A stretch of 64,000 nt of DNA, from assembly GCA_002269645.1 (NCBI GenBank), contig NIVC01002533.1:99474-163473 (forward strand), in the 5' to 3' direction. The DNA is from Macrostomum lignano (Eukaryota). The stretch's first letter is position 1. Each line of letters opens with the position of its first letter. The position numbers were made by a program, and so were the translations under genes. Below the pieces are notes generated by a model. The model saw only the letters and a program-made list of their open reading frames with translations. It ran no database searches and was not told the origin of the DNA. Of this stretch, positions 3,001-34,997 are shown piece by piece.

Positions 3001-3203
3001 GGCATTTTCCCCGCTAACTTTGTCACCGAGAGGGCCGGCTCGGCTGCTTCCGGTGCGTGCTAGAGATGCTTGTGGCTTGTTTCGTCTGTGTGCCTGTCTG
3101 TCTGTGTCTGTGTGCCTGTCTGTCTGTCTGTCTGTGTCTGTGTGCCTGTCTGTGTGTCTGTCTGTGTCTGTGTGCCTGTCTGTCTGTGTCTGTGTGCCTG
3201 TCG

Positions 3204-3241
<38 letters not shown>

Positions 3242-3438
3242 GTGCCTGTCTGTCTGTCTGTCTGTCTGTCTGTGTGCCTGTCTGTCTGTCTGTCTGTGTC
3301 TGTGTGCCTGTCTGTCTGTCTGTCTGTCTGTCTGTGTGCCTGTCTGTCTGTCTGTCTGTGTCTGTGTGCCTGTCTGTCTGTCTGTCTGTGTCTGTGTGCC
3401 TGTCTGTCTGTCTGCCTGTCTGTCTGTGTCTGTGTGCC

Positions 3439-3488
<50 letters not shown>

Positions 3489-3516
3489 CCTGCCTGTCTG
3501 TCTGTCTGTCTGTCTA

Positions 3517-3559
<43 letters not shown>

Positions 3560-3614
3560 GCCTGCCTGCCTGTCTGTCTGTCAGTGTGTCTGACTGTCTG
3601 CCTGTCTGCCTGCC

Positions 3615-3657
<43 letters not shown>

Positions 3658-3667
3658 GTGCCTGTCG

Positions 3668-3717
<50 letters not shown>

Positions 3718-3727
3718 GTGCCTGTCG

Positions 3728-3783
<56 letters not shown>

Positions 3784-6700
3784 CTGTGTGTCTGGAAAAA
3801 CCTGGACCTCTCTCCCCTATACTGCTTTTATTTCCTGTCGCACAAAATTCTTTGTATTCAAAATTCAAAATTCTTGAAACGCATAAAATTCTTATATCAT
3901 CAATATTTTAGGCGCCGCGGCCGCCACATCTGACCCGTTCGGCGACGCGTCGGCGACCAGCGCCGCAGCAGATCCGTTCGCCGACGCCGCCTCCGCCTTC
4001 GACTCGGCGCCCAGCTCCGTATTCGATCAGCAGCCTCAGCAACAGCCTCAGCAACAGCCTCAGCAGCAGCCTCAGCAGCAGCAAGAAATCGCCATAGCAA
4101 CCGCCCCATTCGAAGCCGGCGGCGAGGGCCAGCTGTCGCTCCGAGTCGGCATGCGAATCGTAGTTAAAAAGAAGCCGGCCAGCGGCTGGTGGAACGGCGA
4201 AGTGGTTGAGAACGGCGTCAAACGTATCGGCTGGTTCCCAGCTTCCTATACTAAATTGGAACAACCCTCGGTTGCTAACGACCAGCGACCGGCATCCAGA
4301 CAGAGCGTCACCTCCAATCAGTCCATGCCTACCAGCGCCGCGCCCGTGGCCTCAGCTGCTCCCCAGGATCGGTTAAAGAAATCCTCAGTTCATACCGCTG
4401 GAGCCGCCTCCGTGTCCGCCTCCACCCCGGACCTGTTCGCCTCGGCTGGTAAGAAAGCCGCTACGCCTACATTATCAGGCTCCATGTCCGCTCAGCAGCA
4501 GCCCACGGCGGCGTTGTCAATGGCAACCAGCGATGACGCTCTATCGTCTAGTTATAACAAAGCTCCATCGTCTAGCGTTGAACGAGTGGTTGCTAAGTAT
4601 CGCTATCAGGCTCGAAATGACGACGAGTTGACGTTTGAAAAAGGAACAATTATCACGGTGAGTAGTTTGTAAGGCTAATTATTGTTTTGCAAATCCACTG
4701 TTTGTTCACGTGTTGTGTTCTTTATTAATCCCACTTTATTATGCTTCAATCTTATAATCCATTTTTATGTAGATTTTGCCTATGTTGATTGAGTTCATCA
4801 AAAAAATGCTAGGCCATAAAGGTGTGACGTTTTCGGAGTGAGATTTAGACATTTAGAGTGACAATTCATTGCAAGACTAAGATCATTTTCGGAGTGCTGT
4901 ATAATTTTATTTTTTAGAGTGACATTCTGGAATTGACATTTTCAGAGTGACATTATGGGAGTGCCATTTCCAGAGTGACATTATGGGAGTGCCATTTCCA
5001 GAGTGACATTATGGAAGTGCCATTTTTAGAGTGACATTATGGGAGTGTCATTCCTAGAGTGACACTATGGAAGTGCCATTTCTAGAGTGACATTATGGGA
5101 GTGCCATTTCTAGAGTGACATGGGAGTGCCATTTTCAGAGTGACATTATAGGAGTGCTATTTCCAGAGTGACATTATGGGAGTGCCATTTTTAGAGTGAC
5201 ATTATGGGAGTGCCATTTTTAGAGTGACATTATGGGAGTGCCATTTTCAGAGTGACATTTTGGGAGTGAAATTTTTGGAGTTATAGAAGTATACAGAGTG
5301 GAGAATTAATTTGGAGTGACATTTTGGGAGTGAAATTTTTGGAGTTATAGAAGTATACAGAGTGGAGAATTAATTTGGAGTGACATTTTTTTCAAGTTTC
5401 AACATTGGCACCTATTATTGATTTATGGTCGAGCCACAGCCAGTTTAAAATTTCATAATTTCAATTTTATTATCCTAGCTGCTAATATACTGCAGGATGT
5501 ACTTTTTATAGTTGATTTTAGTAAACTGTAAAATTAAATTCAACTGTACCTTGGCAGATGAAATGTGTATATTTTATCCTAGAACTGTATCCCCCACTCA
5601 TTTGCAGGGGAATGATCATGAGAAGGATTAATTAATTCTCTATATATCAAAAGCTACAAATCATATCTTTTGATTGTTAAAACATTCGATTAATTTATAT
5701 TTCAATGACAATTTTGATTGATTTTAATTAATCATTCACTCTCTTAGAATTATAATAATCAAATAGGGTGCTTTTTAAATCATATTCAATTTATATATTC
5801 GACGATAACATTATTTAGTTAAATATATTTATAATATCACTACTTTATGAAAACTGATACTCTAATAGGCACAAAAATACAACGCAGGATAGAGTATCAT
5901 TCTAATAAATGTTTATAGATATTCATATCTTCAAATATGCTTCATTTTATTGACGATTTTCAATTATTTAGCGCCACCCTACCAGACTCTCCAGTGGGGT
6001 TATGCCACCCTCCCAGACTCTCCAGTGGGGTTATGCCACCCTCCCAGACTCTCCAGTGGGGTTATGCCACCCTCCCAGACTCTCCAGTGGGGTTATGCCA
6101 CCCTCCCAGACTCTCCAGTGGGGTTATGCCACCCTCCCAGACTCTCCAGTGGGGTTATGCCACCCTCCCAGACTCTCCAGTGGGGTTATGCCACCCTCCC
6201 AGACTCTCCAATGGGGTTATGCCACCCTCCCAGACTCTCCAGTGGGGTTATGCCACTCTCCCAGACTCTCCAGTGGGGTTATGCCACCCTCCCAGACTCT
6301 CCAGTGGGGTTATGCCACTCTCCTAGACTCTCCAGTGGGGTTATGCCACCCTCCCAGACTCTCCAATGGGGTTATGCCACCCTCCCAGACTCTCCAATGG
6401 GGTTATGCCACCCTCCCAGACTCTCCAGTGGGGTTATGCCACTCTCCCAGAATCTCCAGTGGGGTTATGCCACTCTCCCAGAATCTCCAGTGGGGTTATG
6501 CCACTCTCCCAGACTCTCCAGTGGGGTTATCCCACTCTCCCAGACTCTCCAGTGGGGTTATGCCACCCTCCCAGACTCTCCAGTGGGGTTATGCCACCCT
6601 CCCAGACTCTCCAGTGGGGTTATGCCACTCTCCCAGACTCTCCAGTGGGGTTATGCCACCCTCCCAGACTCTCCAGTGGGGTTATGCCACTCTCCTAGAC

Positions 6701-9700
6701 TCTCCAGTGGGGTTATGCCACCCTCCCAGACTCTCCAATGGGGTTATGCCACCCTCCCAGACTCTCCAATGGGGTTATGCCACCCTCCCAGACTCTCCAG
6801 TGGGGTTATGTCACCCTCCCAGACTCTCCAGTGGGGTTATGGCACCCTTCCTGACCATCCAGTGTGGTTATGCCACCCTCCCAGACTCTACAGTGGGGTT
6901 ACGTCACCCTCCCAGACTCTCCAGTGGGGTTATGCCACCCTCCCAGACTCTCCAGTGGGGTTATGCCACCCTCCCAGACCCTCCAGTGGGGTTATGCCAC
7001 TCTCCCAGACTCTCCAGTGGGGCTATGCCACCCTTCCTGACCCTCCAGTGGGGTTATGCCACTCTCCCAGACTCTCCAGTGGGGTTATGCCACCCTCCCA
7101 GACTCTCTAGTGTGGTTATGCCACCCTCCCAGACTCTCCAGTGGGGTTATGCCACCCTCCCAGACTCTCCAGTGGGGTTATGCCACTCTCCCAGACTCTC
7201 CAGTGGGGTTATGCCACCCTCCTAGACTCTCCAGTGGGGTTATGCCAATATGTAGCACTGACTAATGAGTAATAATATATAAGAGCGGGATTCTAAATGA
7301 ATTTTCTATATTAAGCTGCTAAGCCAAAGCCAATTTTTGCTAAAGTCATTATCAATTTTAGAGTATTTTTATTATTATCTTTCTTGTACATACCATTATT
7401 TTATATGATTCATTTGACTCGCTTAGCAAAATTAATTAAACAGTAGTATGTTAGGTACATCTGATTCTAAACATGATTAAATGGCTGGCTGTGTTAGACT
7501 TTTAATTACTTTTAGTAAAGATTTTTTGATAGTAGTCGCGTAGATTAGGATATTGATCAAAGGATTTTTATAATTTCGACGTTTTTTACTTTCTTCATTA
7601 TGTTTTCACCCTAATGTCAACAATAGTGCAAGTTGTGTGCATGATAGATAGCGTTATGTTTTTAGAATTTCATTTCATAGCATCAAGTTTTTTATATTTA
7701 AAATTTGCTTTCAATTTACGTAAATAAGCAATAACGATTTCTGTTAATCTGCAGAACTTTTTCCTTATCAATACAAAATTTTTCGCAGAAATTTCATTAC
7801 GTCACAATTGTTTTTTCGCTGTCTTCTGATTCTTACCGGCGCGAAAATTCCATGACATCGCATGTCTGATTTTTTTCTTAAGGGGAGAAATTTTGTAGAC
7901 AAAGGAGAGATTGGATAGATAGACAAGGAAGAAATTGGGTAGATAGACAAGGGAGAGATTGGGTAGATACACAAGGGAGAGATTAGGTAGATAGACAAGG
8001 GAGAGATTGGGTAGATAGACAAGTAAGAGATTGGGTAGATAGACAAGGAAGAGATTGGGTAGACAGACAAGTAAAAGATTGGGTAGATAGACAAGTAAGA
8101 GATTGGGTAGACAGACAAGGGAGAGATTGGGTAGATAGACAAGGAAGAGATTGGGTAGACAGACAAGGGAGAGATTGGGTAGATAGACAAGGGAGAGATT
8201 AGGTAGATAGACAAGGGAGAGATTAGGTAGATAGACAAGGAAGAGAATGGGTAGATAGACAAAGAAGAGATTGGGTAGACAGACAAGGGAGAGATTGGGT
8301 AGATAGACAAGGAAGAGATTGGGTAGATAGACAAGGGAGAGATTAGGTAGATAGACAAAGAAGAGATTGGGTAGATAGACAAGGAAGAGATTGGGTAGAT
8401 AGACAAGGGAGAGATTAGGTAGATAGACAAAGAAGAGATTGGGTAGACAGACAAGGAAGAGATTGGGTAGATAGACAAGGAAGAGATTGGGTAGACAGAC
8501 AAGGGAGAGATTAGGTAGATAGACAAGGAGAGATTAGGTAGATAGACAAGGGAGAGATTGGGTAGACAGACAAGGGAGAGATTAGGTAGATAGACAAGGA
8601 GAGATTAGGTAGATAGACAAGGGAGAGATTGGGTAGACAGACAAGGGAGAGATTAGGTAGATAGACAAGGGAGAGATTGGGTAGATAGACAAGGAAGAGA
8701 TTGGGTAGACAGACAAGGGAGAGATTAGGTAGATAGACAAGGAGAGATTAGGTAGATAGACAAGGGAGAGATTGGGTAGACAGACAAGGGAGAGATTAGG
8801 TAGATAGACAAGGGAGACATTGGGTAGATAGACAAGGAAGAGATTGGGTAGACAGACAAGGGAGAGATTAGGTAGATAGACAAGGAGAGATTAGGTAGAT
8901 AGACAAGGGAGAGATTGGGTAGACAGACAAGGGAGAGATTAGGTAGATAGACAAGGGAGACATTGGGTAGATAGACAAGGGAGAGATTGGGTAGATAGAC
9001 AAGGGAGAGATTAGGTAGATAGACAAGGGAGACATTGGGTAGATGACAAGGAAGAGATTGGGAGTTGGAGCTGACAGGAAGTATACTAAAATTAGAGAAA
9101 GTCCCAGAAAAACGGCCGCATTGCCCCTAGCAACCAAGCCTTAGCAACAAGTAAATAAGCTATTCATTTGATCCAATCCTACCTGTCTTGCCCAGGTGAT
9201 CTCCAAAGACGAGCCAGACTGGCACAGGGGCAGGACGGCTAGCCTACGCGAAGGCCTCTTCCCTGTAAATTACGTTGAACCGCTGCCTCAGCAGGAGCCA
9301 AATCGCCAGATGGTGGTCAACGAGTTGACTAACAGCGAGAATACCTATTACAACGATCTGTTGGAGGTTTGGAATAAATTTCACGAGCCAATGCTAGAAT
9401 CTGGACTGCTGACGCAGGACCAGCTGGATGCCATCTTTCTGAATTGGACCGACCTGATGAACTGCTCCTACAGTCTGCTCATGGCTTTGAAGGTGAGCTG
9501 CTTGTTGTTGCGTTGCTTTTTAATGGGGAAATCTTTATGGGTTATCGTGTCTGCATAGATTATCGTGTCTATATAGATTATCGTGTGTCTGTGTGAATTA
9601 TCGTGTGTCTGTATGGATTATCGTGTGTCTGGATGGATTATCGTGTGTCTGTGTGGATTATCCTGTTTTTTATGGATTATCGTATGTCTGTGTGGATTAT

Positions 9701-12700
9701 CCTGTTTTTTATGCATTATCATGTGTTTGTGTGGATTATCGTGTGTCTATATAGATTATCATGTGTCTGTATAGATTATCGTGTGTCTGGATGCATTATT
9801 GTGTGTCTATATGGATTATCGTGTGTCTGTATAGATTATCGTGTGTCTGTATGGATTATCGTGTGTCTGTATGGATTACCGTGTGTCTGTATGGATTATC
9901 GTGTGTCTGTATGGATTATCGTGTGTCTGTATAGATTATCGTGTGTCTATATAGATTATCGTGTGTCTGTATGGATTATCGTGTGTCTGTATAGATTATC
10001 GTGTGTCTGTATAGATTATCGTGTGTCTGTATGGATTATCGTGTGTCTGTATAGATTATCGTGTGTCTATATAGATTATCGTGTGTCTATATGGATTATC
10101 GTGTGTCTGTATAGATTATCGTGTGTCTGTATGGATTATCGTGTGTCTGTATGGATTATCGTGTGTCTATATAGATTATCGTGTGTCTGTATGGATTATC
10201 GTGTGTCTGTATTGATTATCGTGTGTCTGTATGGATTATCGTGTGTCTGTATGGATTATCGTGTGTCTGTATGGATTTTCGTGTGTCTGTATGGATTATC
10301 GTGTGTCTGTATGGATTATCATGTGTCTGTATGGATTATCGTGTGTCTGTATGGATTATCATGTGTCTGTATAGATTTTACCAAACTATACAAACTTGAT
10401 CAGGTACGCAAAGAGGGCGGCACAGACGCCATCGGTGACATCATGCTGCAGCACCTGCCCCAGCTCACCTGCTACGTCAGATTCTGCGGCAGGCAGAGCG
10501 CGGCTACTCAACTGCTCACTCAACGGATTAACTCCGTGCCCGAGCTCGCCCAACTAGTTCGCCACTGCGAGCAGCAGACCTCTAGCGGCAAGCTGATGGG
10601 TTTAATTCAATATTTTGTTAAGCCTATGCAAAGAATCACTCGCTATCCGCTGCTGATTGAGAAGCTGCTCAAAGCTACGCCCGAGTCGCATCCGGACAGG
10701 GGCAGTCTGCAGGAGGCTCTGGATGAGGCTAAGAAGCTGTGCCAGACTGTCAATGAGAGCGTGCGAGAGACTGAGAACTCTGGCCGCTTGGAGTGGTGCC
10801 AGGTGAGTGCGGGGCCTTGCTGGTCTGGTGAGTGAGTGACTGAGTCACTGAGTGAGGGAGCGAGTGAGTGAGTGAGTGAATGAGGGAGCGAGTGAGTGAG
10901 TGAGGGAGCGATTGAGTGAATGAGGGAGCGAGTGAGTGAATGAGGGAGCGAGTGAGTGAATGAGGGAGCGAGTGAGTGAATGAGGGAGCGAGTGAGTGAA
11001 TGAGGGAGGATTGAGTGAGTGAATGAATGAGGGAGCGAGTGAGTGAATGAGGGAGCGAGTGAGTGAATGAGGGAGCGAGTGAGTGAATGAGGGAGCGAGT
11101 TAGTGAGTAAAGCAGGGAGCGAGTGAGTGAGTGAGTGAATGAATGAGGGAGCGAGTGAGTGAGTGAGTGAATGAGGGAGCGAGTGAGTGAGTGAATGAAG
11201 GAGCGAGTAAGTGAGTGAATGAGGGAGGATTGAGTGAGTGAATGAGGGAGCGAGTGAGTGAATGAGGGAGGATTGAGTGAGTGAATGAATGAGGGAGCGA
11301 GTGAGTGAATAAGGGAGCGAGTTAGTGAGTAAAGCAGGGAGCGAGTGAGTGAGTGAATGAATGAGGGAGCGAGTGAGTGAGTGAGTGAATGAGGGAGCGA
11401 GTGAGTGAGTGAATGAGGGAGCGAGTAAGTGAGTGAATGAGGGAGGATTGAGTGAGTGAATGAATGAGGGAGCGAGTGAGTGAGTGAGTGAATGAGGGAG
11501 CGAGTGAGTGAGTGAATGAGGGAGCGAGTAAGTGAGTGAATGAGGGAGGATTGAGTGAGTGAATGAATGAGGGAGCGAGTGAGTGAATGAGGGAGCGAGT
11601 GAGTGAATGAGGGAGGATTGAGTGAGTGAATGAATGAGGTAGCGGAATGAGGGAGCGAGTTAGTGAGTGAATGAAGTAGCGACTAGTAACACTTGCTCAT
11701 AGTTTGACTGACAGATTAAGCAGATCTGCATTCATCTATTCTCGAAAACAAACCAAACTCCCAGGAGCACGTGATCTGCGAAGGCCTGTCGGAGAAGCTG
11801 GTGTTCAACTCGCAGACCAACTGCCTCGGCCAGCGCCGCCTAGTGCACTGGGGCACCCTGTTCAAGCACAAGGGCGGCAAAGAGCTTGTGGTGTTTTTAT
11901 TCAACGATTTCCTACTGCTAACAGTGCCAGTCTTCAACACCCAGGGCCGGCCGTTTGTGTTCCCCTCGCTGGCTCTGGACGGCAATGCCGCGTCAGCTTC
12001 AGAAGACGATCAACTGGCCAACAGTCAGAAGCAGAAATACCGAATGTACAAGAGGCCGATTATACTGAACGATCTGATGACTGTACCAGAGCCAGATCGG
12101 GACAGCGGGACGGAGCCGCCGCTGCTCTGCATTCGGGTGCTGCCTAACGAGGACTGGGTGTTCCGCTGTCAGAGTGCTCAAGATCGGGACAGGTGGAAAG
12201 ATCGACTAACCAAAACTGCTAAGGAATATCACAATGCTACTGGTGAGGAGTGCTATGTGTGTTAAAGTAACAGTGGATAAATTTGCTTTTTTTGTCTTGT
12301 GCAATACATCTTACTTATGTATATTTAGTTTTTCCGTATCACTTGCTTCACTGCTCAGGACCGTGATACCATTTTTTTCATAAATTAAATCGTATCTCCT
12401 TATCATCTGTCTCAGTTCACATTATTTTTCCTTTCCTTTCTTCTCTTCTCTTTTCCCCATCGCTTCACGCCTCTCATCATTGCCTCTTATCCCTTATCCC
12501 CTCTTATCCCTTCTTATCCCTATCATTCCCTCTTATCCCTTCTTATCCCCTCTCATCCCCTCTCATCCCCTCTTATCCCCTCTTATCCCCTCTCATCCCT
12601 TATCATTCCCTCTTATCTCTTCTTATCCCCTCTCATTCCTTCGCATCCTTTTTTATACCCTCATCCCTTCGTATCCCCTTTTGTCCCTTTCATCCCTTTG

Positions 12701-15700
12701 CACCCCCTTTTATCCCCTCTCATCCCTCCGCATGTCCCTTTCATCCCTTTGCACCCCCTTTTGTCCCTCTCATCCCTTTGCATCCCATTTTATCCCCTTT
12801 CATCCCTTCGCATCCCCTCTCATTCACTCATGCCCTTGCATCTCATCCCCTCTTATCCCCTTTCATACCCTCTGTTGTTGTTAAACGAGGCTGGGTAGCC
12901 AGGGGCTCCCGCGGATCAGCCCAGAGAAGGGCTCTGCTTCATCTGCTTCATCTGATAGGGGGCACATCTACCAGTGGGCATATAGCCCGAGCAGCCCAGA
13001 TTGGGACCTGACGTCATGGCCAGGGAGAGAGCACTAATTGGGGCTACTAGCTCAAGCCTATGGACTAAGACACCGCCAACCCATAAGTGGAATCAAGGAC
13101 GGTGCTAAGACCGAGTCCACCCAAGCCACCACCCAGCAGACAAATCCCGGGAGTGCGCAAAAGAAAGATTGGAAAAGCATTGGATACTACTGAAAGCGGT
13201 CCGAGAGCGGGGAAACCCCGAAGTCTACGGAAATGGCTTGCATTAATTGGAGTGAGTCTGGGAGGCTTGTTTCCGAGGGCGAGTCTCCTGTCCAGCTCTA
13301 ATTTGGAGCCCAGGCCAAGGGGTCGGGGAGGGGCACAAGGAGCAAGAGGACCCGGACTCAGCCGGTATCCCAGATTCGGGACGAACATCAACCCCAGGAC
13401 TCCAATCCACTGTCAGAGATGAGAGCCGAGACACAAGGGCAGGGAACTTCCAGAGGAGCCAGCAGGATGGACCGGGCAGGGAGGGCAGAGCTCATAACTC
13501 CAGAATTTTGGCGCGGCATTCAAAGGCCTTACATTAATAAAAACACAAAGATAAAGCACAAGAGGGGATAAAAACAATGGGAGGAGCACCTGAACCCTAA
13601 ACCCGGGGCTAACTAACTAACTAACTAAATAAGTAAATCCGGCGCCTCAGCCTATTGAATAAGGCTCTTACGCCACTAGAAAGATATAGGTTCCAAGTTG
13701 GGAGTGTACGTATGTACACTAGGTTCCTAAGCTAGGGAGAGTACTGTGTAAAGGGCAAGTAACAAATCAAAAACCTCCCCGGGGGACAGTGACAGCGGTA
13801 CGACGCACCAGGGGAAGCCCGTGCCCAAAACACCAGGTTGGATAGACCCCTTGCCTATTAGGGTTGGCCCGAAGGCCGAGAGCCTTGGCTACCATGCTGG
13901 GGCCGACCGCCCACCACCCCCGGGTACTCAAGCCAAACGTACATAAACCTCCCCGGGGCCAGAGGGGGTTGAGTGAACCATTCAGGGAAGCCCGTGCCTT
14001 CTCCTGGGTTAGATAGGCCAAAACACCGGTCATAAGACCGCCCCCACGGCCGTGGCGACCCGAAGGAGCCTCCCCCCCAACTAAACCCCGGGTACTCTTG
14101 CCAGACAGTCTCTTATCTTTGAAGCGGCAGGAGGGCTAATCGCCGGGACTATTTCACCCTTTGCTTCGCCATCCCGCCATTTCTATAGTGACCGTGCCAA
14201 CGGTCTCGTCCTGCTCAGACTCAGTCCTGGTTCTGGCACACTCCAGCTTTAATAGGGTCGCTGGCTGTACGCTCAGAGGGCACTCCGAGGGGGACCGTCA
14301 GAGCACCAACTGGTACAGGTATAAGCCTGCCTTCCTATACAGCTACCCACAGCCCTTCCTGATCCACTATTACCCTCCAACCCAGCCTACTCACTCATTA
14401 CAAGCTTTCAGCCAGGCAGAGACAAGTTTCACAGGGGTACTGCGGTTAGGCGCCTCTATGCGAGACAAAACCAGCACCTGAACCCTAAACCCGGGGCTCA
14501 GCCTCAGGGCTGGCATGCTAACTGGGCTCTACCGTACACCTTTGTGAATGGTCATTTTCTTTCCTGTAGGGCGGGTGCGACCGGGGAGCTCAAGTCCCGT
14601 TCTAAGCCACACTGCAGTCCAGAGTACGCACTCACTCCAGGTACACCCCCACCTAACCAAGGCCCAGGGCCGAAATAATTGGAAAGAAAAAATAGGGTTA
14701 TTTTTAGATGAGTACACATGCTTGGGCGCAACCTTGGGATTCACTCGGCCGTTTCTATTGGCGGCACACACATGTGGGTCGCTATTGGACGGAATAGTAG
14801 TCACGTGACTGCTCTCAGCCAATAGCGACTTACATGTGTGTGTTGCCAGTAGAAGCGGCCGGGTGATTCCCAAAGTTGCGCATGTACAGTCAGTGACTGT
14901 ACATACGTACATACGTACATGCGTACTGTACATCACCTCCGGTGAGGACTCTAATTTGATTGGGCTAGCGAGTGCTAGGCCAATTGGATTGCGCACAACC
15001 CCGAGAAATGCCGCCAGAGAGGCAGCCAGGGTAAAAACAGTCAGAGACCGTCTTTACCGTCATACCCTCTTTCCCTCTCATCCCCTCTTCCCCTCTTCCC
15101 CTCTCACTCCCTCATTCGTTCCCTTTTCTTATATCCTTAAAGTCTTTGTGTGTATCCTGAGCTTCGCATAGCAAGTAGTGCATTGCAGTTTTTTGCATAT
15201 ACAGTATTATTTACGGGATTTTGTTGGAAAAAATTTGCTTCTAAAACAGCGCTTTGCACTGCCTAGTAACAAGTGACCAATCGTATTTATTTTGTTGATT
15301 TGACTTGTTTTCTCTTTTTTTAATTCCAGGAAGATTTGGTAAGACATGTTGGCAGTTTGCTTAGCTCTTTGGCACTAGGAAATTCAAACTTTTCATTTAA
15401 ATTCAAATTTCTATAATTCTACTTGGTTAAGTTGAAGTCATTTTTATTAATTTTTACAGATTTGAACGATTTTAATTTTATAAATTTATAAATCCAAAAG
15501 TTCAGATAAGATTATAAATTATTAGAGACTTGTGATGAATTGTTAATTATGCTCTCCGTGATTTATTTGATGCTTTTGTCCTTTTCCTGTCCGCATCTTT
15601 GTTAGACTTTCTGACACGCTTTTGTCCTATCAGAATCCGTGAAATTTATCTATAAATCTGTAAATTTATGACAAAATCTTCTAGATTTTCTCAACACAGT

Positions 15701-18700: not shown

Positions 18701-21700
18701 TCTTCTCCAAATAGGATTTCAATCAGTAGCTCCCATATGACTGCTTGTGATCCCATTCTTCCCCGAATGGGATTTCAATCAGTAGCTCCAATATGAATGC
18801 TTGTGATCCCATTCTTCCCCAAATAGGATTTCAATCAGTAGCTCCCATATGACTGCTTGTGATCCCATTCTTCTCCAAATAGGATTTCAATCAGTAGCTC
18901 CCATATGACTGCTTGTGATCCCATTCTTCCCCGAATGGGATTTCAATCAGTAGCTCCAATATGAATGCTTGTGATCCCATTCTTCTCCAAATAGGATTTC
19001 AATCAGTAGCTCCCATATGACTGCTTGTGATCCCATTCTTCCCCAAATGGGATTTTAATCAGTAGCTCCCATCTGACTGCTTGTGATCCCATTCTTCCCC
19101 AAATGGGATTTCAATCAGTAGCTCCCATATGAATTATAATCACATTCTTCCCCAAATGGGATTTCAATCAGTAGCTCCCATCTGACTGCTTGTGATCCCA
19201 TTCTTCCCCAAATGGGATTTCAATCAGTAGCTCCCATCTGACTGCTTGTGATCCCATTCTTCTCCAAATGGGATTTCAATCAGTAGCTCCCATATGACTG
19301 CTTGTGATCCCATTCTTCTCCAAATGGGATTTCAATCAGTAGCTCCCATCTGACTGACTGCTTGTGATGCCCCATTCTTCCCCAAATGGGATTTTAAGCA
19401 ATAGCTCCCATAAGTGATTTATCAAAAAAATCGATAAAATATATCCCTAATAATTAGCCCACTTTATGCTGTTCGTGCATTCTCTGCTTTAATTTTTAAT
19501 TGCACCACAACAGCTATGCAATGCGCACTACGGTGTGGTTATAGCATTTGTTTGTTTTACTTATTTTTACGTGGTGTCGTTATAGATTCCTAAATCAATA
19601 TTTTCTGTCTATTAGTAGTATAATAGTAGTATTATAATCATATTAGTGCTATTATTAAATAGCGACAAGCTTCTATACTGTTGTTTGTTCAACCTGTCTA
19701 CATGTAGAACGCATGGCTAGAAGGCGCCTGCATCGAGTAAGTTGCTATCAGCTGATAATTTTAATGAGATGCTCATTGCAATATCATTATTAACACTTTA
19801 CTTAAAGTTCTTAGCAGCAAATTTAAAATTTGAAGCTATAGTATAGTAATGATAATTGTCAAAGACAATGGCTCTTGTTATTTTGTTTAAAAGTGTACGA
19901 TGTACTTTTAATCTCAAAGTAATCACGTGTGCAATATAGCTTTTTGCCTTTATATAACCGCCTAAAATTTGCTGCTAATATCAGTAAATAAAGTGTTAAT
20001 CAAATTCTAATTTTTATTTTGACTCCTTAAGGACGCTAATATAAAGTAAAATCGTTAACAGTGTCTTTTTCAATTCCATTGCTTGTTCTTTTAAGTCTAC
20101 ATTCGACAATTGGCTGTTCTATCATAACCCTACCCCCCAACCCTACCCAACCCTACCCTAACCCTACACACCTACCCCTAACCTTACCCTAACCCAAACC
20201 AATATTGTCGACAGTGAGTAGTCATCAAGTAGCTATTTCTGTTCAATTCACTTATTTACTGCTTTAAAAGTACCAACAAAAATGGTTTGTATTTCATTTC
20301 ATATTTTTAGAGAAATTGGCTATCGAAGGTAATAAAAGACGCAGTTTATTATAAATTTCAATAATGATTGAATTATTGAGACTGGGCAACTTCATAGTCT
20401 CCACTATATTCATTGTGTCTCAAATAACCAGTTATTACGTTTTCCTTTAATTGCCCTTGATAACATAGGCGTCGGCATAGTGTGACTAATTGGCACTAAA
20501 TTTTATATTATCGTCTTTAACCAATTTTAATCTCTCGCTTTCAACGATAAACTTTTTTGGCTGGCATAGTTTTAATTTATTAATTAGTTCCATTAATCCA
20601 GTGCGGTTCTACTAAAGGTTTAAATTAATGAACACTATAGATATTAAACCAAACTATGGTTTTAGAAGGGGGCCGTAGCCCAGTGGTCCAGCAGGCGCTC
20701 TGATTTGCCAGCGGCCCAGGCTTGATTCCAAGTGCAGTCACATTAATTTGAGGCTAAATTGGAATCTCGGCTTGGCTCAGCTCGTGCAATTAACGGCCTT
20801 GAGGGCCAACCCCAAGGCACAGTGAAGTGTACATGCCTAGGGCCGCTGTACACTCCTGTGTGAGTGTGTGCCTGTGCGTATGACTGCTCAGGAGAGTCGG
20901 TGGAATGGGCAGTAATGGGCAGAAATGGGCGGTTGTGTGACAATGTCATTTGAAGTGCGCCAGGTGCACACAGCCCCTGCCTCTGATGAAAAATGGTTAT
21001 TTATATAAACCGTAGCGCGGTATACGCACTACTTATTATTGGCAGTAGTTTTGCAGTTGGCTTAATTAAAACGCATTATTGTAACTCGTCCGCTGCGTCG
21101 CTGCACTCTAGCCTCTTTCGCTATAGTAAAAAACATTGCGTTCGCTGATTGGCTGGGGTGTTTATCTCTCTCTGTCCCGCCTCCATCATTCTACCCTTCT
21201 CCTCATTCCTATTGGCTGTGCAGCGTCGTAGCCTGCCCCCTCCCCCTAGCCAATATAGTTGATTGGCTACAATTACACTAACGAAAAGTCCATTCATTAG
21301 GCTTGAATATGATTTTAAAACAGAAGATTTTTATTATAAATTCTGGTATTTTAATAAATTTTATTCATATAAAAAACCGATTATAAAATTACTATTAGGG
21401 TGATGGTTTTCTTCAACTGTTAAACCTTGAATTATTTCTTAAATGTATAGCCATTCTGATTGAATCTGATTGCATGTGCTTTAAAGTTTTAATCAGATTG
21501 TTCAGAAAGCAACTTATACGGTATCGTTGATAAAAACATTCGTAATTGTAGTAACTCGTATAAAAGTCGATATTTAGCTTAATAATAAGAGCAACAGACG
21601 CTTGCATCAGCCAAGCAAAGTTATTATAATTAATTATTATTTAATAATATTGTTTATTTCTTTTGTTGGCGTATAAGTATGAACTCAATAATGCTTGTAT

Positions 21701-22788
21701 TCCTAATGAACCAGTGGGTGTCTTAAATTTTAACAATATTACTTGAGCTGTTTGACTTTATAGGCCAACTCAAGAGTTTTTTTAAACAAAACTTTCCACT
21801 TGTACACAGGGCCTCCCATCATAGAGCCCCACCCACTCGCCCTAGACAAAGCCTACCCTACTCCTAAACAAACAACACCTACCCTCAAATATACGCAGGG
21901 CCTTCCCTCAAAAGCCCACTCCACTCCCCCCTAGACAATTCCTGCCCCCAGATGTACGCAAGGCCTCCCGTCATAAACCCCCACCCCACTCCCCCTAGAC
22001 AATTACTACCCCCAGATGTACGCAGGACCTCTCCACATAACCCCCCGCCCCATTTCCCCTATTCAATTACTGCCCCCAGATGTAACGCAGGGCCTCCCTT
22101 CATAAACCCCCGCCCCACTCCCCCTAGTCAATTACTGCCCCCAGATGTACGCAGGGCCTCCCCTCATAAAACCCCCGCCCCACTCCCCCTAGAGTGAGCC
22201 AATCAGCGCCAATTGTTACACAGAGAGCCTCTCGCACAAGCCTCTACTCCCTCTACAGTTATCTTCCTTATCTTCCAACCACAGCAAACACGCCTAAACT
22301 TACTCAGTTTTTATTGTGCTAGAACCCACCCTTTCCCCAATAAAAACTACGCAGAAAACAACCAACGCAGCCGGGCCTTCAGCCGGGAGAGCGTCGGTCG
22401 GCTACTACTAACAGTAGAGCAGGGCTACTCATTGAAGGTTGGCAATCTGGGCGGTGACAACAAAAGCGACCCGTACGCCGAAGTTTCACTAGGCTCGCAA
22501 CGCCAGTGCACCGAAGTGATTAGAGCTACGCTAAATCCGGTGTGGAACAAAGCAATGCAATTTCACATTGCCGACCCCAACGAGGACGTCCTATCCATCA
22601 CTGTGTACGATCGTGATTTCTTTTCGCCGAACACTTTCCTAGGCCGAGCCGAACTGCGCATTGCCGATGTGGCCAAAGACTTGGCTAAAGCGAAGCACGG
22701 GCCAATCACAAAACGATTGCGATTGTCCGAGGTTGACACTGGCGAGGTCCAGATTAAGCTGGACTTGCAGATGCACGGCTCGCATTGA
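1..22788 (+). CDS. ITSN: Intersectin, long (DH-PH-C2) form; 5'-partial. Exons 1-86, 410-570, 1286-2026, 2415-3052, 3912-4657, 9196-9492, 10404-10802, 11765-12242, 22355-22788
   Basis: All exons have GT-AG borders with matching phases. The product has a coiled coil, five SH3 domains (e.g. YRALYDF..., [15 protein letters not shown]...GWWEG...[24 protein letters not shown].../W..G...GLFPVNYV), DPF and WxxF motifs, DH ([18 protein letters not shown]), PH ([18 protein letters not shown]...[10 protein letters not shown], closely like vertebrate ITSN1) and a C-terminal C2 ([10 protein letters not shown]...TLNPVWN...[13 protein letters not shown]). Confidence 0.95.
722..1246. repeat. 24-bp minisatellite (ACACAGATTAGATTGCAGATTGCT)n, intronic
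   Basis: Directly visible tandem unit; explains ORFs 737..1261 and 744..1280. Confidence 0.95.
2060..2335. repeat. 20-bp minisatellite (AGATAGACACTTAGGTACTC)n
   Basis: Visible tandem repeat in an intersectin intron. Confidence 0.9.
3080..3790. repeat. (TCTG)n-type microsatellite with TGTG/GCC variants
   Basis: Visible; produces spurious Cys/Leu/Ser/Val ORFs. Confidence 0.95.
4915..5390. repeat. ~28-bp minisatellite (GAGTGACATTATGGGAGTGCCATTTYYA)n
   Basis: Visible tandem repeat. Confidence 0.85.
5978..7248. repeat. 31-bp minisatellite (GCCACCCTCCCAGACTCTCCAGTGGGGTTAT)n
   Basis: About 40 visible copies; ORFs 5937-7265 are repeat translations. Confidence 0.95.
7899..9060. repeat. 24-bp purine-rich minisatellite (GGGAGAGATTGGGTAGATAGACAA)n
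   Basis: Visible tandem repeat. Confidence 0.95.
9540..10377. repeat. 20-bp minisatellite (GGATTATCGTGTGTCTGTAT)n
   Basis: Visible; fills the intron between the two DH exons. Confidence 0.95.
10826..11675. repeat. (GAGT)-derived minisatellite (GAGGGAGCGAGTGAGTGAAT)n
   Basis: Visible tandem repeat. Confidence 0.9.
12440..15125. repeat. CT-rich low-complexity repeat (ATCCCCTCTY)n, split by the insertion at 12874-15060
   Basis: The same CT-rich texture occurs at 12440-12873 and 15061-15125 and joins seamlessly if the insert and one TSD copy are removed. Confidence 0.8.
12874..15060 (-). mobile_element. Retrotransposed-type insertion with no recognisable ORF (non-autonomous element or retrocopy); TSD, (AAC)n tail, SL-like 5' end
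   Basis: Direct repeat CATACCCTCT at 12864-12873 and 15061-15070 (11 bp if the preceding T is counted). There are no TIRs. The minus-strand 3' end is ...TTTAACAACAAC. Composition shifts abruptly from the flanks. Confidence 0.75.
15735..19410. repeat. 56-bp satellite (TGCTTGTGATCCCATTCTTCCCCAAATGGGATTTCAATCAGTAGCTCCCATATGAC)n, ~65 copies
   Basis: Visible tandem unit; each unit has an internal 8-bp inverted repeat ATCCCATT/AATGGGAT. Confidence 0.95.
20103..20211. mobile_element. Mini foldback/MITE-like element with degenerate CCCTAA-like internal repeats
   Basis: Termini TCGACAATTGG and CCAATATTGTCGA are inverted repeats (2-nt indel) enclosing AACCCTAC/ACCCTAAC repeats. Confidence 0.45.
20668..21000 (+). 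mobile_element. tRNA-derived SINE, family A, copy 1
   Basis: A-box GTAGCCCAGTGG, B-box-like GGCTTGATTCC; long colinear similarity to 59001-59343. Confidence 0.8.
21805..22195. repeat. Degenerate ~60-bp C-rich tandem repeat (…CCCCCAGATGTACGCAGGGCCTCCC…)
   Basis: About six diverged copies visible. Confidence 0.75.
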
Positions 22789-25372: not shown

Positions 25373-26047
25373 CTCGCTGTGACGCTGTCGCTTTCACAAG
25401 ACCGAATATTTTACTGAATATAACTGCCTTCACAATGCTGAAATTTTGTTCCTTTCAAGTAGATAAGAGATATTCGGGTACATATTTTAACTAGGAAGAT
25501 ACATGCATTCTAACTGAATCTATTGTTAATTTATTGAGCACAGCAGCTGGCTCTCACCGAAGTGTTAGCGGTTGCTTGTTGCAGCTCAACAGGCATACCG
25601 GCAGAGTTCAGAGCAGCCGTTGTCAGGGCAACCCTGTAGTAGGTGAATCTGCAGTTTCTTCAATTCCATGGCTAATTATTAATTATTATAATTATAGTTC
25701 TCTTGGGCTATTTTAACATCTTTTTATGATAGTTCCCAAAATCTCGAAAATAGTTTTTCAATGCTCGATCGAAAAGATGAAATTTCTTGTATAGAAGCTG
25801 AAGAAAATTTTCTTCTGTGTCGGCAAAAGAGATAAAGCATCAAAAGGTGACGATTTATATATAAACATGTAATCGCCATGGTTGCGTAAGACTGACGATC
25901 GACGAACTAAAAATAAAAAGCTAATTCGACTGTTTCTTGTTTTTCAAAAAAGGCAGCAGCAGACGGGACTACAATGTTACGAACACTTACGATTGCTGTT
26001 TTTCCTCGCTAGGATTATAAAGTATACACCGCACTGCTGCTGCAGCT

Positions 26048-26795
26048 ATCCCAGCAACTGAGGATCTGGGAGGCTGGCGCAGCGACTGATGAGGATCTGG
26101 GAGGCTGGCGCAGCGACTGATGAGGATCTGGGAGGCTGGCCCAGCGACTGATGAGGATCTGGGAGGCTGGCCAAGTGACTGATGAGGATCTGGGAGGCGG
26201 GCCCAGCGACTGATGAGGATCTGGGAGGCTGGCCCAGCGACTGATGAGGATCTGGGAGGCTGGCCAAGTGACTGATGAGGATCTGGGAGGCTGGCGCAGC
26301 GACTGATGAGGATCTGGGAGGCTGGCCAAGTGACTGATGAGGATCTGGGAGGCGGGCCCAGCGACTGATGAGGATCTGGGAGGCTGGCCAAGTGACTGAT
26401 GAGGATCTGGGAGGCTGGCCAAGTGACTGATGAGGATCTGGGAGGCGGGCCCAGCGACTGATGAGGATCTGGGAGGCTGGCCCAGCGACTGATGAGGATC
26501 TGGGAGGCTGGCCCAGCGACTGATGAGGATCTGGGAGGCTGGCCCAGCGACTGATGAGGATCTGGGAGGCTGGCCCAGCGACTGATGAGGATCTGGGAGG
26601 CTGGCCCAGCAACTGACGCTCATGGGAGGCTGGCCCAGCAACTGAAACTCTGGGAGGCTGGCCCAGCAACTGAAACTCTGAGAGGCTGGCCCAGCGACTG
26701 ATGAGGATCTGGGAGGCTGGCGCAGAAACTGTGGATCTGGGAGGTTGGCCCAGCAAGTGTGGATCTGGGAGGCTGGCCCAGCAACTGGGGACTTT
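26048..26795. repeat. 31-bp minisatellite (GAGGATCTGGGAGGCTGGCCCAGCGACTGAT)n, family X array 1
   Basis: Visible; same family as 34998-36180 and 38505-39570. Confidence 0.95.
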
Positions 26796-28141
26796 TGGCT
26801 GCTGACCAAAGCGGTTTTTCAAGACTGTTGTCAAATCCAAGAAAAAACAATGCTTTTATGCCTTATCATTAGGATCTGTAAAATCTTTAAATATACCAAT
26901 TGCTGTTTTATCTTAGTTTAAGCGACCCGTTTTCAATTGTTTTCCTAGTGTTCAATTTTTAAGGGTCAATAAAATTCCGAAAAATGCATTGCCATCATGA
27001 TTGCTTTTGATATACCAGCTAAAGTAAACAGTAGTGCGCTAATACTTAGTATCCGATAAGGGAAACTTTGTTTCGGAAAATCCATGGAAAAACCGTAGAA
27101 TTTCCATGAGAGTAATGATTGCTTCAGGCTGAAGTTCGTAGCTTGAAGTAAATAAGGACCACTTTAGTAAAACTGGACCTACATGTAAAACTCAAACATC
27201 GTGTAATTTTTTGGAGGCCGACTTTCTGGAAAAAGTACTCTGTGGAGATATTAAAAAAATCATTTTAATCACAAAATAAATGATGATTGCATTTGATTGA
27301 TTGATTCGTTCATTTTTTAATGATAATCATATTTGTTAATAAAATGTTGCATTCAGGTACTGCTCCTGAGCGCCACTATGGTAGGCGTAGTTCCATTCCG
27401 ATGCGCATTGTTTCTACAATACAGCGGGGCAACAATGGTAAATTAAAATAATGGTAATATTCACTGCCCCAGATAAAATGAAATCATTTTAATTTTGTTT
27501 TGATTAAATAGGATTTTTATTATCTCCGCAGTGCATTTCCCAGGAAATTGGTCTCCAAACAATTTCCATATGATCTTTAAAGTGTTACGTCCTGTTTTAC
27601 GAGTACTTCAAGGTAACAAGTGACTGTAATAATCACGCCTTTTATTTATTTACGAGTAATTTAACTTGAGCAGAATTTGCCCAACTTTAGCAACTTTAAT
27701 TGTGTATTTATTAATAAGCAGAAACCATTTTTGTTTTAGCAATTAAAAGGATTTTATTGGCCTTATAAGCGACTAATGTAGGTAGAAAAGAGTAGAAAAC
27801 AAGGTGCTAAAGTACGAATTTTAATCAAACACAAAGATATTTTTTATCATGCTTTTAGACGATTAAATACTTATAAAGAGATTTGTAGCGAGATTGAATT
27901 CAACTGCAACATTATTTGATATTGACTTGTTTAAAAAAAACTGGTTATAGATGGATACCGAGCAGAGAAGTACTGCAGCGAGTATGTATGGTTAGGGTCG
28001 TCAGGGTTATTTCGAAAAGTAGTTCAGCCGGGAGTCAGTGCGATGGTATAGTGTGGCGATCCATTCAAACTTTTATCATTAGTTTAGGTTAAAGTCACAT
28101 AAACCGCCTTCCATGTTTCATCTTAAACAGAATCGCTTGGC

Positions 28142-34651: not shown

Positions 34652-34997
34652 TCTACCACACTGTGTGCAAGAGATGAAAATAAGGTTGATTTATAAAACT
34701 GAAAAAGGAATTCGTTCGTAAGAAAATGTGCTTTATAATGCAGTTGCACCAATAAATTTAGCTCCTTGCTTACTGCGCACCCCGAATGGGGGCACTAGAT
34801 TGCTAGTCGAATCTTATTTTCTAAGCGAAAAGCTCTATACTGCATTTGTGTCCGATTAAAAGCCAATAGCAATTCTTGTGCCGAAAAATGAAAACCTCCA
34901 TCTTCGCAATGCACTTTACTCGGTAAAATCAGCCTCCTAAATTTCCCAAGAAACGTAATTAATAGTTTCCCGTTTATCTACTTGAAATAGTTGAATA

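What the first reader, a model, noticed from the sequence alone, without database searches (positions are those of the whole stretch)
15038..15060. The insertion's 5' end matches the start of the flatworm spliced leader
Seen: the first 23 nt on the minus strand, right at the TSD border, are ACGGTAAAGACGGTCTCTGACTG. From memory (needs verification), the Macrostomum lignano SL begins (G)CCGTAAAGACGGTCTCTTACTGCG. That gives 19/20 identity over GTAAAGACGGTCTCTnACTG, with both 5' ends in register. The match stops at ~nt 23 and the terminal SL AUG is absent, so this is not an ordinary trans-spliced retrocopy. Known: NeSL (nematode) and CRE/SLACS (trypanosome) retroelements insert into SL RNA genes. 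Inferred options: (a) an element resident in SL genes, co-transcribed from the SL promoter and carrying the SL 5' piece when it jumps; (b) an SL-RNA-headed SINE-like family; (c) an undescribed AUG-less SL variant. Any of these could be a new system in flatworms.
Basis: partly seen in the sequence, partly recalled or inferred. Interest (0 to 1): 0.85.

Follow-up and report, generated by a model that had tools for sequence, protein, structure and literature searches.

The report
Spliced-leader hairpin heading a flatworm retroposon
A 2.2-kb non-coding retroposed insertion in a Macrostomum gene intron really does begin with the first 18-23 bases of the worm's spliced leader, folded with their own inverted copy into a 33-base hairpin, but with only one copy in reach it is a curiosity of a partly known kind, not yet a new system.

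Summary
Minus strand 15060-15038 reads ACGGTAAAGACGGTCTCTGACTG. That is 20/23 identical to the start of the published Macrostomum spliced leader (SL), (G)CCGTAAAGACGGTCTCTTACTGCG..., and in register with it. No shuffle of the window gave such a match. The window is M. lignano or a very close relative.

The insertion spans 15060-12874 on the minus strand (2187 bp). It has a 10-11 bp target-site duplication that occurs nowhere else in the window, and an (AAC)3 tail. It has no coding capacity and lies antisense in an intron of an intersectin-like gene.

The 5' terminus is therefore a 13-15 bp hairpin (z about -5.6), which explains why the SL match stops near nt 23. Both 5'-arm differences from the canonical SL (A1, G3) are mirrored in the other arm.

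Beyond nt 23 nothing resembles SL RNA. There is no AUG, splice donor or Sm site, and no reverse transcriptase gene. The insertion is composite: it holds a MITE-like palindrome and a probable nested retroposon.

My best reading is that reverse transcriptase captured an SL 5' fragment by template switching and snap-back copying. A family-wide SL-derived head is the main rival. No other copy could be reached, so this stays open. Partial leaders on flatworm retroelements are already reported.

The parts
15061..15070 (-). Upstream copy of the target-site duplication AGAGGGTATG (11 bp if the next base, A at 15060, is included).
   Evidence: This 10-mer occurs only here and at 12864-12873 in the 64-kb window.
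15038..15060 (-). SL-derived 23-mer ACGGTAAAGACGGTCTCTGACTG. It corresponds to SL nt 1-23 (20/23 identical, core 15/15).
15028..15060 (-). 33-nt terminal hairpin. Nt 3-15 (GGTAAAGACGGTC) pair with nt 19-31 (GACTGTTTTTACC) around the loop TCT. There are 11 Watson-Crick and 2 G.U pairs, plus A1-T33 and a C2xC32 mismatch.
   Evidence: dG -16.5 kcal/mol, z -5.6, 0 of 200 shuffles fold as well. The canonical SL alone gives only -8.8 kcal/mol, z -1.25.
12874..15060 (-). The whole insertion, 2187 bp. It is non-coding and composite.
   Evidence: sequence; no ORF above 155 aa; no Pfam hit; no protein homologue; no Rfam family or tRNA.
14715..14886 (.). MITE/foldback-like palindrome of about 170 bp nested in the insertion. 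It is an independent repeat family.
   Evidence: inverted arms 63 nt, 86% complementary; a 92% identical copy stands alone in M. lignano NIVC01000464.1 (L003 3470-3641), flanked there by GCCGCAAC on both sides.
13611..14472 (-). Probable nested retroposon, 862 bp, ending in an (AGTT)n tail.
   Evidence: (repeat D3). It is flanked by an exact 26-bp direct repeat, AGCCCCGGGTTTAGGGTTCAGGTGCT, at 14498-14473 and 13610-13585.
12874..12882 (-). 3' end of the insertion, the (AAC)3 simple-repeat tail (...GTTTAACAACAAC). There is no poly(A).
12864..12873 (-). Downstream copy of the target-site duplication AGAGGGTATG.
12493..12873 (.). Target satellite with a 10/20/30-bp period (GGGGATAAGA / GGGGATGAGA). 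It continues at 15061-15104 on the other side of the insertion.
11771..12265 (+). PH-domain exon of the host intersectin-like gene. The insertion lies antisense in the intron between this exon and the C2 exon at 22213-22788.
   Evidence: SH3 domains, RhoGEF at 10299-10835, PH_13 (E 2.6e-38) and C2 (E 2.4e-22), all on the + strand.

Best explanation
The 2187-bp insert is a copy of a non-coding RNA that a LINE-type reverse transcriptase (RT) inserted. It sits antisense in an intron of an intersectin-like gene of Macrostomum lignano.

Its first 18-23 nt were copied from the extreme 5' end of the spliced leader, taken either from SL RNA or from the leader on a trans-spliced RNA. Nt 19-33 are a fold-back (snap-back) copy of nt 1-15. 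The element therefore starts with a 33-nt hairpin and lacks the 3' half of the leader, including the AUG.

Proposed origin (inferred, not shown): at the end of reverse transcription, RT used a short cap-proximal SL fragment as extra template or primer. The canonical SL can already pair C11-G23, G12.U22, G13-C21 and U14-A20. A fragment ending near nt 23 can therefore fold back and be extended to its own 5' end. Synthesis then continued on the element. This gives a chimera comparable to U6-L1 chimeric retrocopies.

Whether this happened at this insertion event or earlier in a source copy is not known.

Shown: the SL identity, register, hairpin, target-site duplication, tail, non-coding nature and composite structure. 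Inferred: RT template switching and snap-back, and the LINE partner.
For: - SL identity and register. Genomic SL RNA genes with the same exon start.
- A unique 10-bp target-site duplication and a simple-repeat tail indicate target-primed reverse transcription.
- No similarity to SL RNA beyond nt 23 (29% of shuffles score as well). No SL RNA gene in the window by covariance model.
- The terminal hairpin is highly non-random. My estimate from base composition is about 2e-6 for 13 consecutive pairs.
- The two 5'-arm deviations from the canonical SL (A1, G3) are matched by T33 and C31. This is expected if one arm was templated on the other (read directly).
- The outer end of the palindrome coincides with SL nt 1. 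This fits run-off at the end of a transcript-derived template.
- The insertion holds other mobile sequences: the palindrome with its own copy elsewhere and an (AGTT)n-tailed segment between 26-bp repeats. Retroposon activity with simple-repeat tails is therefore ordinary in this genome.
- Precedents, from established knowledge and not tested here: U6/U3/5S-L1 chimeras made by RT template switching, snap-back second-strand priming by RTs, and capped 5' RNA oligomers left by RNase H as plus-strand primers in hepadnaviruses.
Against: - Only one copy was seen, so a one-off event cannot be separated from a feature of the family.
- Known snRNA-LINE chimeras usually carry the whole small RNA, not 18-23 nt.
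- The model needs an SL source with A/G at nt 1 and G at nt 3, which is not documented. Otherwise it needs two compensatory double changes.
- The arms differ at 3 of 15 positions while the 10-bp target-site duplication is perfect (roughly p 0.1-0.3 if both date from the same event). This mildly suggests the hairpin is older than this insertion.
- Two of the three arm differences are G.U-compatible. This would also fit selection on an RNA hairpin.
- No LINE partner with an (AAC)n tail was identified.
Confidence: 0.4

Rival explanations
1. Family-level head. A family of non-autonomous, LINE-dependent retroposons has as its standard 5' end an SL-derived hairpin (SL nt 1-18/23 plus its complement). 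The hairpin would be kept because it works at the RNA or cDNA level. Possible roles are a cap-proximal or promoter-like module, protection of the 5' end, or a cDNA 3' hairpin that self-primes second-strand synthesis.
For: - The hairpin tolerates only G.U-type changes in 2 of 3 differences.
- The A1-T33 and G3-C31 pairs look like compensatory pairs.
- The target-site duplication is perfect while the arms have diverged. This hints that the hairpin predates this insertion.
- Heads derived from small RNAs are the rule in SINEs. All trypanosomatid retroposons share a 5' signature, Pr77, with promoter activity (PMC8190864 and PMC1874656, listed).
Against: - No second copy was found in the window, in 23 kb of M. 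lignano scaffold, or among 5.8 billion proteins via the element's ORFs.
- The head contains none of the SL RNA parts known to matter (donor, Sm site, stem-loops II and III).
- With three differences, the statistics on G.U pairs are negligible.
Confidence: 0.3
2. Ordinary trans-splicing followed by rearrangement. The element's transcript received the full SL by trans-splicing, as is known for transposon transcripts, and was retroposed. The 3' half of the leader was then lost and the inverted arm was created by a later local rearrangement or replication fold-back.
For: - PMC12582326 interprets 597 loci with partial leaders on LTR/LINE elements in parasitic flatworms in this way.
- About 30% of Hydra transposon Iso-Seq reads carry an SL (PMC12220107).
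- About 30% of M. lignano genes are trans-spliced (PMC8629364).
Against: - 5' truncation during retroposition removes the 5' part of a leader, not the 3' part. Here the 5' part is kept and nt 24-45 are absent, with no residual similarity.
- The mirrored A1/T33 and G3/C31 pairs, and a palindrome ending at nt 1, are not expected from a genomic deletion.
Confidence: 0.12
3. SL-gene resident. The source copy sits inside an SL RNA gene at about nt 18-23, as NeSL-1, SLACS, CRE1 and CZAR do. It is transcribed from the SL promoter starting at SL +1. This copy would be an off-target insertion that took the SL piece with it.
For: - The 5' end is in register with the SL transcription start.
- SLACS transcription from the interrupted SL gene's promoter is a known precedent (established knowledge, not tested here).
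Against: - No RT or restriction-like endonuclease ORF or remnant.
- The window holds no SL gene, and the copy lies in a GA-rich satellite with its own target-site duplication.
- Under this model the complementarity of nt 24-33 to nt 1-10 would be an unexplained coincidence.
Confidence: 0.08
4. Retro-copied viral mRNA with a cap-snatched host leader. In a host where many mRNAs start with the SL, a snatched 10-23 nt primer would be the SL 5' end.
For: Only the length of the SL piece (18-23 nt) and its register at the cap end.
Against: - No long ORF and no protein-family hit in the 2.2 kb.
- The tail and the nested repeats look like cellular retroposons.
- The hairpin is not explained.
Confidence: 0.03
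5. Chance resemblance to the SL.
For: A pattern with 19 specified bases does hit unrelated bacterial DNA by chance in very large collections: L001, L004 and L006.
Against: - In 64 kb the expectation is essentially zero: 0 of 100 shuffles.
- The match lies exactly at an insertion border, in register with SL nt 1, and in a genome that uses this SL.
Confidence: 0.02

Closest known systems
Partial spliced-leader sequences associated with LTR/LINE elements in parasitic flatworms (PMC12582326), and relict SLs in retroposed genes of dinoflagellates (Slamovits & Keeling 2008, cited in that paper)
   Same: An SL-derived stretch on the 5' side of a retroposed sequence in an SL trans-splicing organism. 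No SL RNA gene features are present.
   Different: Those loci are explained by retroposition of trans-spliced RNAs, so the 3' part of the leader abuts the body. Here only the cap-proximal 18-23 nt are present, the AUG half is missing, and the piece is duplicated in inverted orientation as a terminal hairpin.
U6-L1 and other snRNA/5S/7SL-LINE chimeric retrocopies made by RT template switching (Buzdin et al. 2002-2003; Garcia-Perez et al. 2007; from my own knowledge)
   Same: A small nuclear RNA sequence with an intact 5' end is fused in sense to the 5' end of a retroposed sequence, inside one pair of target-site duplications.
   Different: The chimeras usually hold the complete small RNA. Here there are 18-23 nt plus a snap-back copy. 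The LINE partner and its tail type, (AAC)n rather than poly(A), differ and are unidentified.
SL-gene-specific non-LTR retrotransposons: SLACS, CRE1/CRE2 and CZAR (trypanosomatids) and NeSL-1 (C. elegans)
   Same: A link between a non-LTR-type insertion and the SL. Their transcripts can start at SL +1 and carry the first SL bases.
   Different: Those are autonomous elements of 6-9 kb with RT and a restriction-like endonuclease, and they sit inside SL genes. This is a 2.2-kb non-coding insert in an intronic satellite with no SL gene nearby.
SINEs with small-RNA heads (tRNA, 7SL, 5S, U1/U2 'SINEU'), and the Pr77 5' signature shared by trypanosomatid retroposons
   Same: It is a non-autonomous retroposon with a target-site duplication and a simple-repeat tail, and its 5' end derives from a small RNA. 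Any 5' function is conjectural.
   Different: SINE heads contain most of the small RNA, including its internal promoter, and exist in many copies. Here only 18-23 nt are derived, the body is over 1 kb, and the copy number is unknown.
5' inversions and fold-backs of LINE insertions (twin priming; snap-back second-strand priming)
   Same: An inverted duplication at the 5' end of a retroposed copy.
   Different: Twin-priming inversions are usually tens to thousands of bases of the element itself. Here the inverted unit is 15 nt of host SL sequence.

Membership tests
SL RNA gene or pseudogene | Complete leader exon (about 45 nt) ending in AUG, followed by a GU(AAG) splice donor | tested here: not met
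   The match ends at nt 23. The 35-nt SL has no hit at up to 3 mismatches anywhere in the window. After nt 23 the sequence reads TTTTTACCC.
SL RNA gene or pseudogene | Intron part with stem-loop II, an Sm-like site and stem-loop III | tested here: not met
   Local alignment to the L002 SL RNA beyond nt 23 is no better than shuffles. A covariance model built from L002 and L005 finds nothing at the site.
Retrocopy of an SL trans-spliced RNA | The leader, or at least its 3' part, is contiguous with the body at the trans-splice junction | tested here: not met
   SL nt 24-45 are absent.
Retrocopy of an SL trans-spliced RNA | Target-site duplication and a 3' poly(A) | tested here: inconclusive
   The target-site duplication is present. 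The tail is (AAC)3, not poly(A).
NeSL / SLACS / CRE clade (SL-specific non-LTR elements) | ORF with reverse transcriptase and a restriction-like endonuclease | tested here: not met
   The longest ORF is 155 aa. Ten element ORFs gave no Pfam hit at E<=1, and there was no protein homologue.
NeSL / SLACS / CRE clade (SL-specific non-LTR elements) | Insertion at a fixed position inside SL RNA genes | tested here: not met
   This copy lies in a satellite within an intron. There is no SL gene in the window.
NeSL / SLACS / CRE clade (SL-specific non-LTR elements) | Source copies with the same termini inside the SL arrays of the genome | not testable with these tools
   No DNA search of the M. lignano assembly was available.
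SINE-like / non-autonomous LINE-dependent retroposon | Flanking target-site duplication, a 3' simple-repeat or A-rich tail, and no coding capacity | tested here: met
SINE-like / non-autonomous LINE-dependent retroposon | Dispersed multi-copy family sharing the same 5' head | tested here: inconclusive
   No other copy was found in the window or in L003 (about 87 kb in all). Protein-based routes were negative. The genome itself was not searchable.
SINE-like / non-autonomous LINE-dependent retroposon | Head derived from a small RNA and carrying its promoter | tested here: inconclusive
   The head is SL-derived for only 18-23 nt. Promoter function is not testable here.
snRNA-LINE chimeric retrocopy (template switching) | Small-RNA part with an intact 5' end, in sense, directly fused to the retroposed body inside one pair of target-site duplications | tested here: met
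snRNA-LINE chimeric retrocopy (template switching) | Other copies of the body exist without the small-RNA part | not testable with these tools
   This needs a search of the whole assembly.

The most novel reading that the evidence does not exclude
Macrostomum harbours a family of LINE-dependent retroposons whose RNA begins with a hairpin built from the cap-proximal 18-23 nt of the spliced leader and their complement. This would be the first SL-RNA-headed, SINE-like family. The hairpin would be functional, for example by mimicking the SL 5' end for capping, transcription or translation, or by letting the cDNA 3' end self-prime second-strand synthesis.
Probability: 0.3. Interest if true: 0.7.

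Novelty: new variant of a known kind. Interest (0 to 1): 0.45.

Why it matters
If the SL hairpin turns out to be the standard head of a family, it would add SL RNA to the short list of small RNAs that retroposons have recruited as heads (tRNA, 7SL, 5S, U1/U2). It would also give a handle on how the cap-proximal part of the leader works in flatworms.

If it is a one-off, it still records reverse transcriptase switching onto, and snapping back on, the 5' end of an SL-bearing RNA in a flatworm. That complements the recently reported partial-leader loci on flatworm retroelements.

There is also a practical point. Genome-wide SL mapping, and annotation of SL genes and trans-splice sites in Macrostomum, should mask such SL-like hairpins.

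Tried and rejected
**Looking for other copies**
- blastn and nhmmer of the element against the window and fetched loci found only the palindrome elsewhere.
- The 155-aa sense ORF searched against 5.8 billion proteins gave nothing.
- The antisense ORF that crosses the 5' junction, searched against 1.84 billion representatives, gave one low-complexity hit and nothing real.
- Exact look-up of element ORFs and of the RMD exon was not on record.
- A full-text search for the variant 15-mer found 0 papers.
- A viral-contig scan found 0.

**The SL head as a diverged or internally deleted SL RNA**
- Rejected. The shared 8-mer ATCCAATT and a U-run plus hairpin after nt 23 are not colinear with SL RNA and are not significant.

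**Rfam and tRNA scans**
- There were no gathering-level hits. A sub-threshold mir-249 hit is just the nested palindrome.

**Other transposon classes**
- Helitron or DNA-transposon readings were considered and rejected. There are no terminal inverted repeats and no TC...CTRR ends, and a target-site duplication is present. Both the outer element and the nested segment have their simple-repeat tails at the same (minus-strand 3') end.

**Assembly artefact**
- A SMRTbell-adapter artefact was rejected, because only 9 nt (GTTGTTGTT) are shared with the adapter sequence as I recall it.

**Empty-site test**
- This could not be done. The PH exon has no M. lignano protein in the database, so the homologous or duplicated locus could not be fetched.
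Full report
**1. The observation**

On the minus strand, 15060..15038 reads ACGGTAAAGACGGTCTCTGACTG.
- M. lignano: CCGTAAAGACGGTCTCTTACTGCGAAGACTCAATTTATTGCATG (PMC5173321).
- M. cliftonense: a 45-nt form starting GCCG.
- M. hystrix: a 43-nt form starting CG (PMC10468722 supplement).

PMC8629364 uses a shorter 35-nt form and describes a 109-bp SL RNA gene.

Collection scans for GTAAAGACGGTCTCTNACTG recovered two complete SL RNA genes on environmental contigs. One is L002, a JGI metagenome contig. The other is L005, a 3.7-kb contig filed under a Flavobacteriaceae MAG. Both read GCCGTAAAGACGGTCTCTTACTGCGAAGACTCAATTTATTGCATG|GTAAGACACCG..., followed by two stem-loops and an AUUUUUAG Sm-like site. 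The 5' extension GCCGTAAAGA is therefore genomic and contiguous with the rest of the leader.

The window 23-mer is 20/23 identical to SL nt 1-23 and in register. The core GTAAAGACGGTCTCT is 15/15. The canonical 23-mer at up to 3 mismatches hits only this site, and none of 100 shuffles produced a hit. The same pattern with 19 specified bases does hit bacterial DNA by chance in 0.6-Tb collections (L001, L004, L006). This shows the scale at which chance would operate, and 64 kb is far below it.

**2. Organism**

A dynamin-like exon (Pfam Dynamin_N/M) matches M. lignano A0A1I8F431. The overall identity is 67%. The aligned blocks are almost perfect, with one mismatch in a 62-aa block and identical blocks of 36 aa and 35 aa. 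They are separated by stretches that look like frameshifts in the older gene model. An internal repeat of the insertion is 92% identical to a stretch of M. lignano scaffold NIVC01000464.1. The window is M. lignano or something very close to it, so the published SL applies.

**3. The insertion**

- The 10-mer AGAGGGTATG flanks the insert at 15070-15061 and 12873-12864 and occurs nowhere else in the window. The next base is A on both sides, so the duplication may be 11 bp.
- The insert (15060-12874, 2187 bp) ends in GTTTAACAACAAC.
- It interrupts a satellite with a 10/20/30-bp period.
- The satellite lies in the intron between the PH exon (11771-12265) and the C2 exon (22213-22788) of a + strand gene. 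That gene has SH3, RhoGEF, PH and C2 domains, the intersectin architecture. The insert is antisense to it.
- It has no ORF longer than 155 aa, no Pfam match in ten ORFs and no protein homologue.
- It has no Rfam family or tRNA.
- It has no terminal inverted repeats.

The target-site duplication, the simple-repeat tail and the lack of coding capacity fit a non-autonomous sequence inserted by target-primed reverse transcription.

**4. The insertion is composite**

- Element nt 190-361 (window 14886-14715) is a palindrome of about 170 bp. It exists on its own at 92% identity in L003 (3470-3641). There it is flanked by GCCGCAAC on both sides, like a hAT-type MITE with an 8-bp target-site duplication.
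- Element nt 589-1450 (window 14472-13611) ends in (AGTT)n and lies between two exact 26-bp direct repeats. It is most simply a nested retroposon.

What remains of the outer element is about 1.1 kb.

**5.

The first 33 nt form a hairpin. Nt 3-15 (GGTAAAGACGGTC) pair with nt 19-31 (GACTGTTTTTACC) around the loop TCT. There are 11 Watson-Crick and 2 G.U pairs, plus A1-T33 and a C2xC32 mismatch.
- dG is -16.5 kcal/mol, z is -5.6, and none of 200 shuffles fold as well. The first 61 nt and the first 110 nt behave the same way.
- The canonical 45-nt SL alone folds weakly (-8.8 kcal/mol, z -1.25).
- From base composition I estimate about 2e-6 for 13 consecutive pairs by chance.

Three consequences follow.

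(a) The SL match stops at about nt 23 because nt 19-33 are the inverted complement of nt 1-15. The canonical SL is itself partly self-complementary there (C11-G23, G12.U22, G13-C21, U14-A20). Nt 20-23 therefore fit both the SL and the complement. The SL-derived stretch may be nt 1-18 or nt 1-23.

(b) The two deviations of the 5' arm from the canonical SL (A1, G3) are mirrored by T33 and C31. An arm templated on the canonical GCCG would read CGGC. The observed CCCT agrees with ACGG in 3 of 4 positions. So either one arm was copied from the other after, or from, an SL variant, or the pairs co-evolved.

(c) Any explanation must account for the hairpin as well as for the SL piece.

**6. What it is not**

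- It is not an SL RNA gene or pseudogene. There is no AUG, no GU donor and no Sm site. There is no significant similarity beyond nt 23, and the SL RNA covariance model finds nothing.
- It is not an ordinary retrocopy of a trans-spliced RNA. In that case the 3' part of the leader should abut the body.
- There is no evidence for a NeSL/SLACS-type element. It has no RT or endonuclease, it is not in an SL gene, and no SL gene is in the window.

**7. Most likely mechanism (inference)**

A reverse transcriptase finishing a copy of the element used the cap-proximal end of an SL-bearing RNA as additional template or primer. A fragment ending near nt 23 can fold back on its own nt 11-14 and be extended to its 5' end. 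This gives exactly SL(1-23) followed by the complement of nt 10-1. Synthesis then continued on the element. The model explains four things:
- the register at nt 1;
- the stop at about nt 23;
- the end of the palindrome at nt 1;
- the loss of the AUG half of the leader.

Each step has precedents: snRNA-LINE chimeras, snap-back priming, and capped RNA oligomers left by RNase H as primers. None was tested here.

One point argues against a fold-back at this particular insertion event. The arms differ at 3 of 15 positions while the target-site duplication is perfect, and two of those differences are G.U-compatible. This mildly favours a hairpin that already existed in the source RNA. It leads to the main rival, a family-level and possibly functional SL-derived head.

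I put the chimera/snap-back reading at about 0.4 and the family head at about 0.3. The rest is spread over a rearranged trans-spliced retrocopy, an SL-gene resident read from the SL promoter, a cap-snatched viral mRNA copy, and chance.

**8. Limits**

No tool gave DNA access to the Macrostomum assemblies. Every route to a second copy failed: self-comparison, 23 kb of M. lignano scaffold, protein searches with sense and junction-spanning antisense ORFs, exact ORF look-ups, collection scans, and a literature k-mer search. The decisive question is whether other full-length copies carry this 5' segment. It is unanswered.

**9. Comparison and novelty**

- Partial leaders associated with LTR and LINE elements are already reported for parasitic flatworms: 597 loci, interpreted as integration of trans-spliced retrotransposon RNAs (PMC12582326).
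- About 30% of Hydra transposon transcripts carry an SL (PMC12220107).
- The general link between SLs and retroelements is therefore known.

What is unusual here is the architecture: only the cap-proximal 18-23 nt, exactly at the 5' border, duplicated in inverted orientation into a terminal hairpin. I rate it a new variant of a known kind, with interest 0.45. It would rise to about 0.7 if a family with this head exists.

Noticed in passing
L005 1589-1697 (JAGQZA010000190.1): A 3.7-kb, low-coverage contig filed under 'MAG: Flavobacteriaceae bacterium HKST-UBA79' carries a complete Macrostomum-type SL RNA gene (45-nt leader, GTAAG donor, two stem-loops, AUUUUUAG site). It is flatworm DNA contaminating a bacterial genome bin.
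   Followed up: partly
L002 615-724 and 1774-2922 (Ga0302322_100095745): A JGI metagenome contig carries a second complete SL RNA gene next to a 382-aa ORF that I judged by eye to resemble a Na/K-ATPase beta subunit (not searched). Compared with L005, the leader and the stems of stem-loops II and III are identical, and only the loops and a few unpaired bases differ.
   Followed up: partly
window 14715-14886; L003 3470-3641: A palindromic repeat of about 170 bp (63-nt arms) lies inside the insertion. A 92% identical solo copy sits in M. lignano scaffold NIVC01000464.1, flanked there by GCCGCAAC on both sides. It is probably a hAT-like MITE. It also accounts for a sub-threshold Rfam mir-249 hit.
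   Followed up: partly
window 13585-14498: An 862-bp segment ends in (AGTT)n and lies between two exact 26-bp direct repeats (AGCCCCGGGTTTAGGGTTCAGGTGCT). It is probably a second, nested retroposon with an unusually long target-site duplication.
   Followed up: no
window 1401-22788 (+ strand): The host gene has SH3 domains, RhoGEF, PH and C2, the intersectin architecture. No M. lignano protein containing its PH exon is in the protein collection (best hit 54%, from another species). The exon may be missing from current gene models.
   Followed up: partly
window 30249-31049 (- strand): A dynamin/Mx-like exon is embedded between GA-rich satellites. The M. lignano UniRef model A0A1I8F431 matches it in near-perfect blocks separated by frameshift-like stretches. 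This suggests errors in the older gene model.
   Followed up: partly
window-wide, e.g. 737-1280, 2954-3933, 5950-7225, 26015-26840, 34937-36224, 38461-39516, 45733-47200, 54603-56064: Introns and intergenic DNA are packed with short-period satellites. These produce many long spurious ORFs of 150-450 aa on both strands.
   Followed up: no
window 20668-20960 and 59006-59297; L003 130-442: Two window segments share 70-73% identity with a stretch inside the XRN-like gene region of the M. lignano scaffold. This is another dispersed repeat and was not characterised.
   Followed up: no
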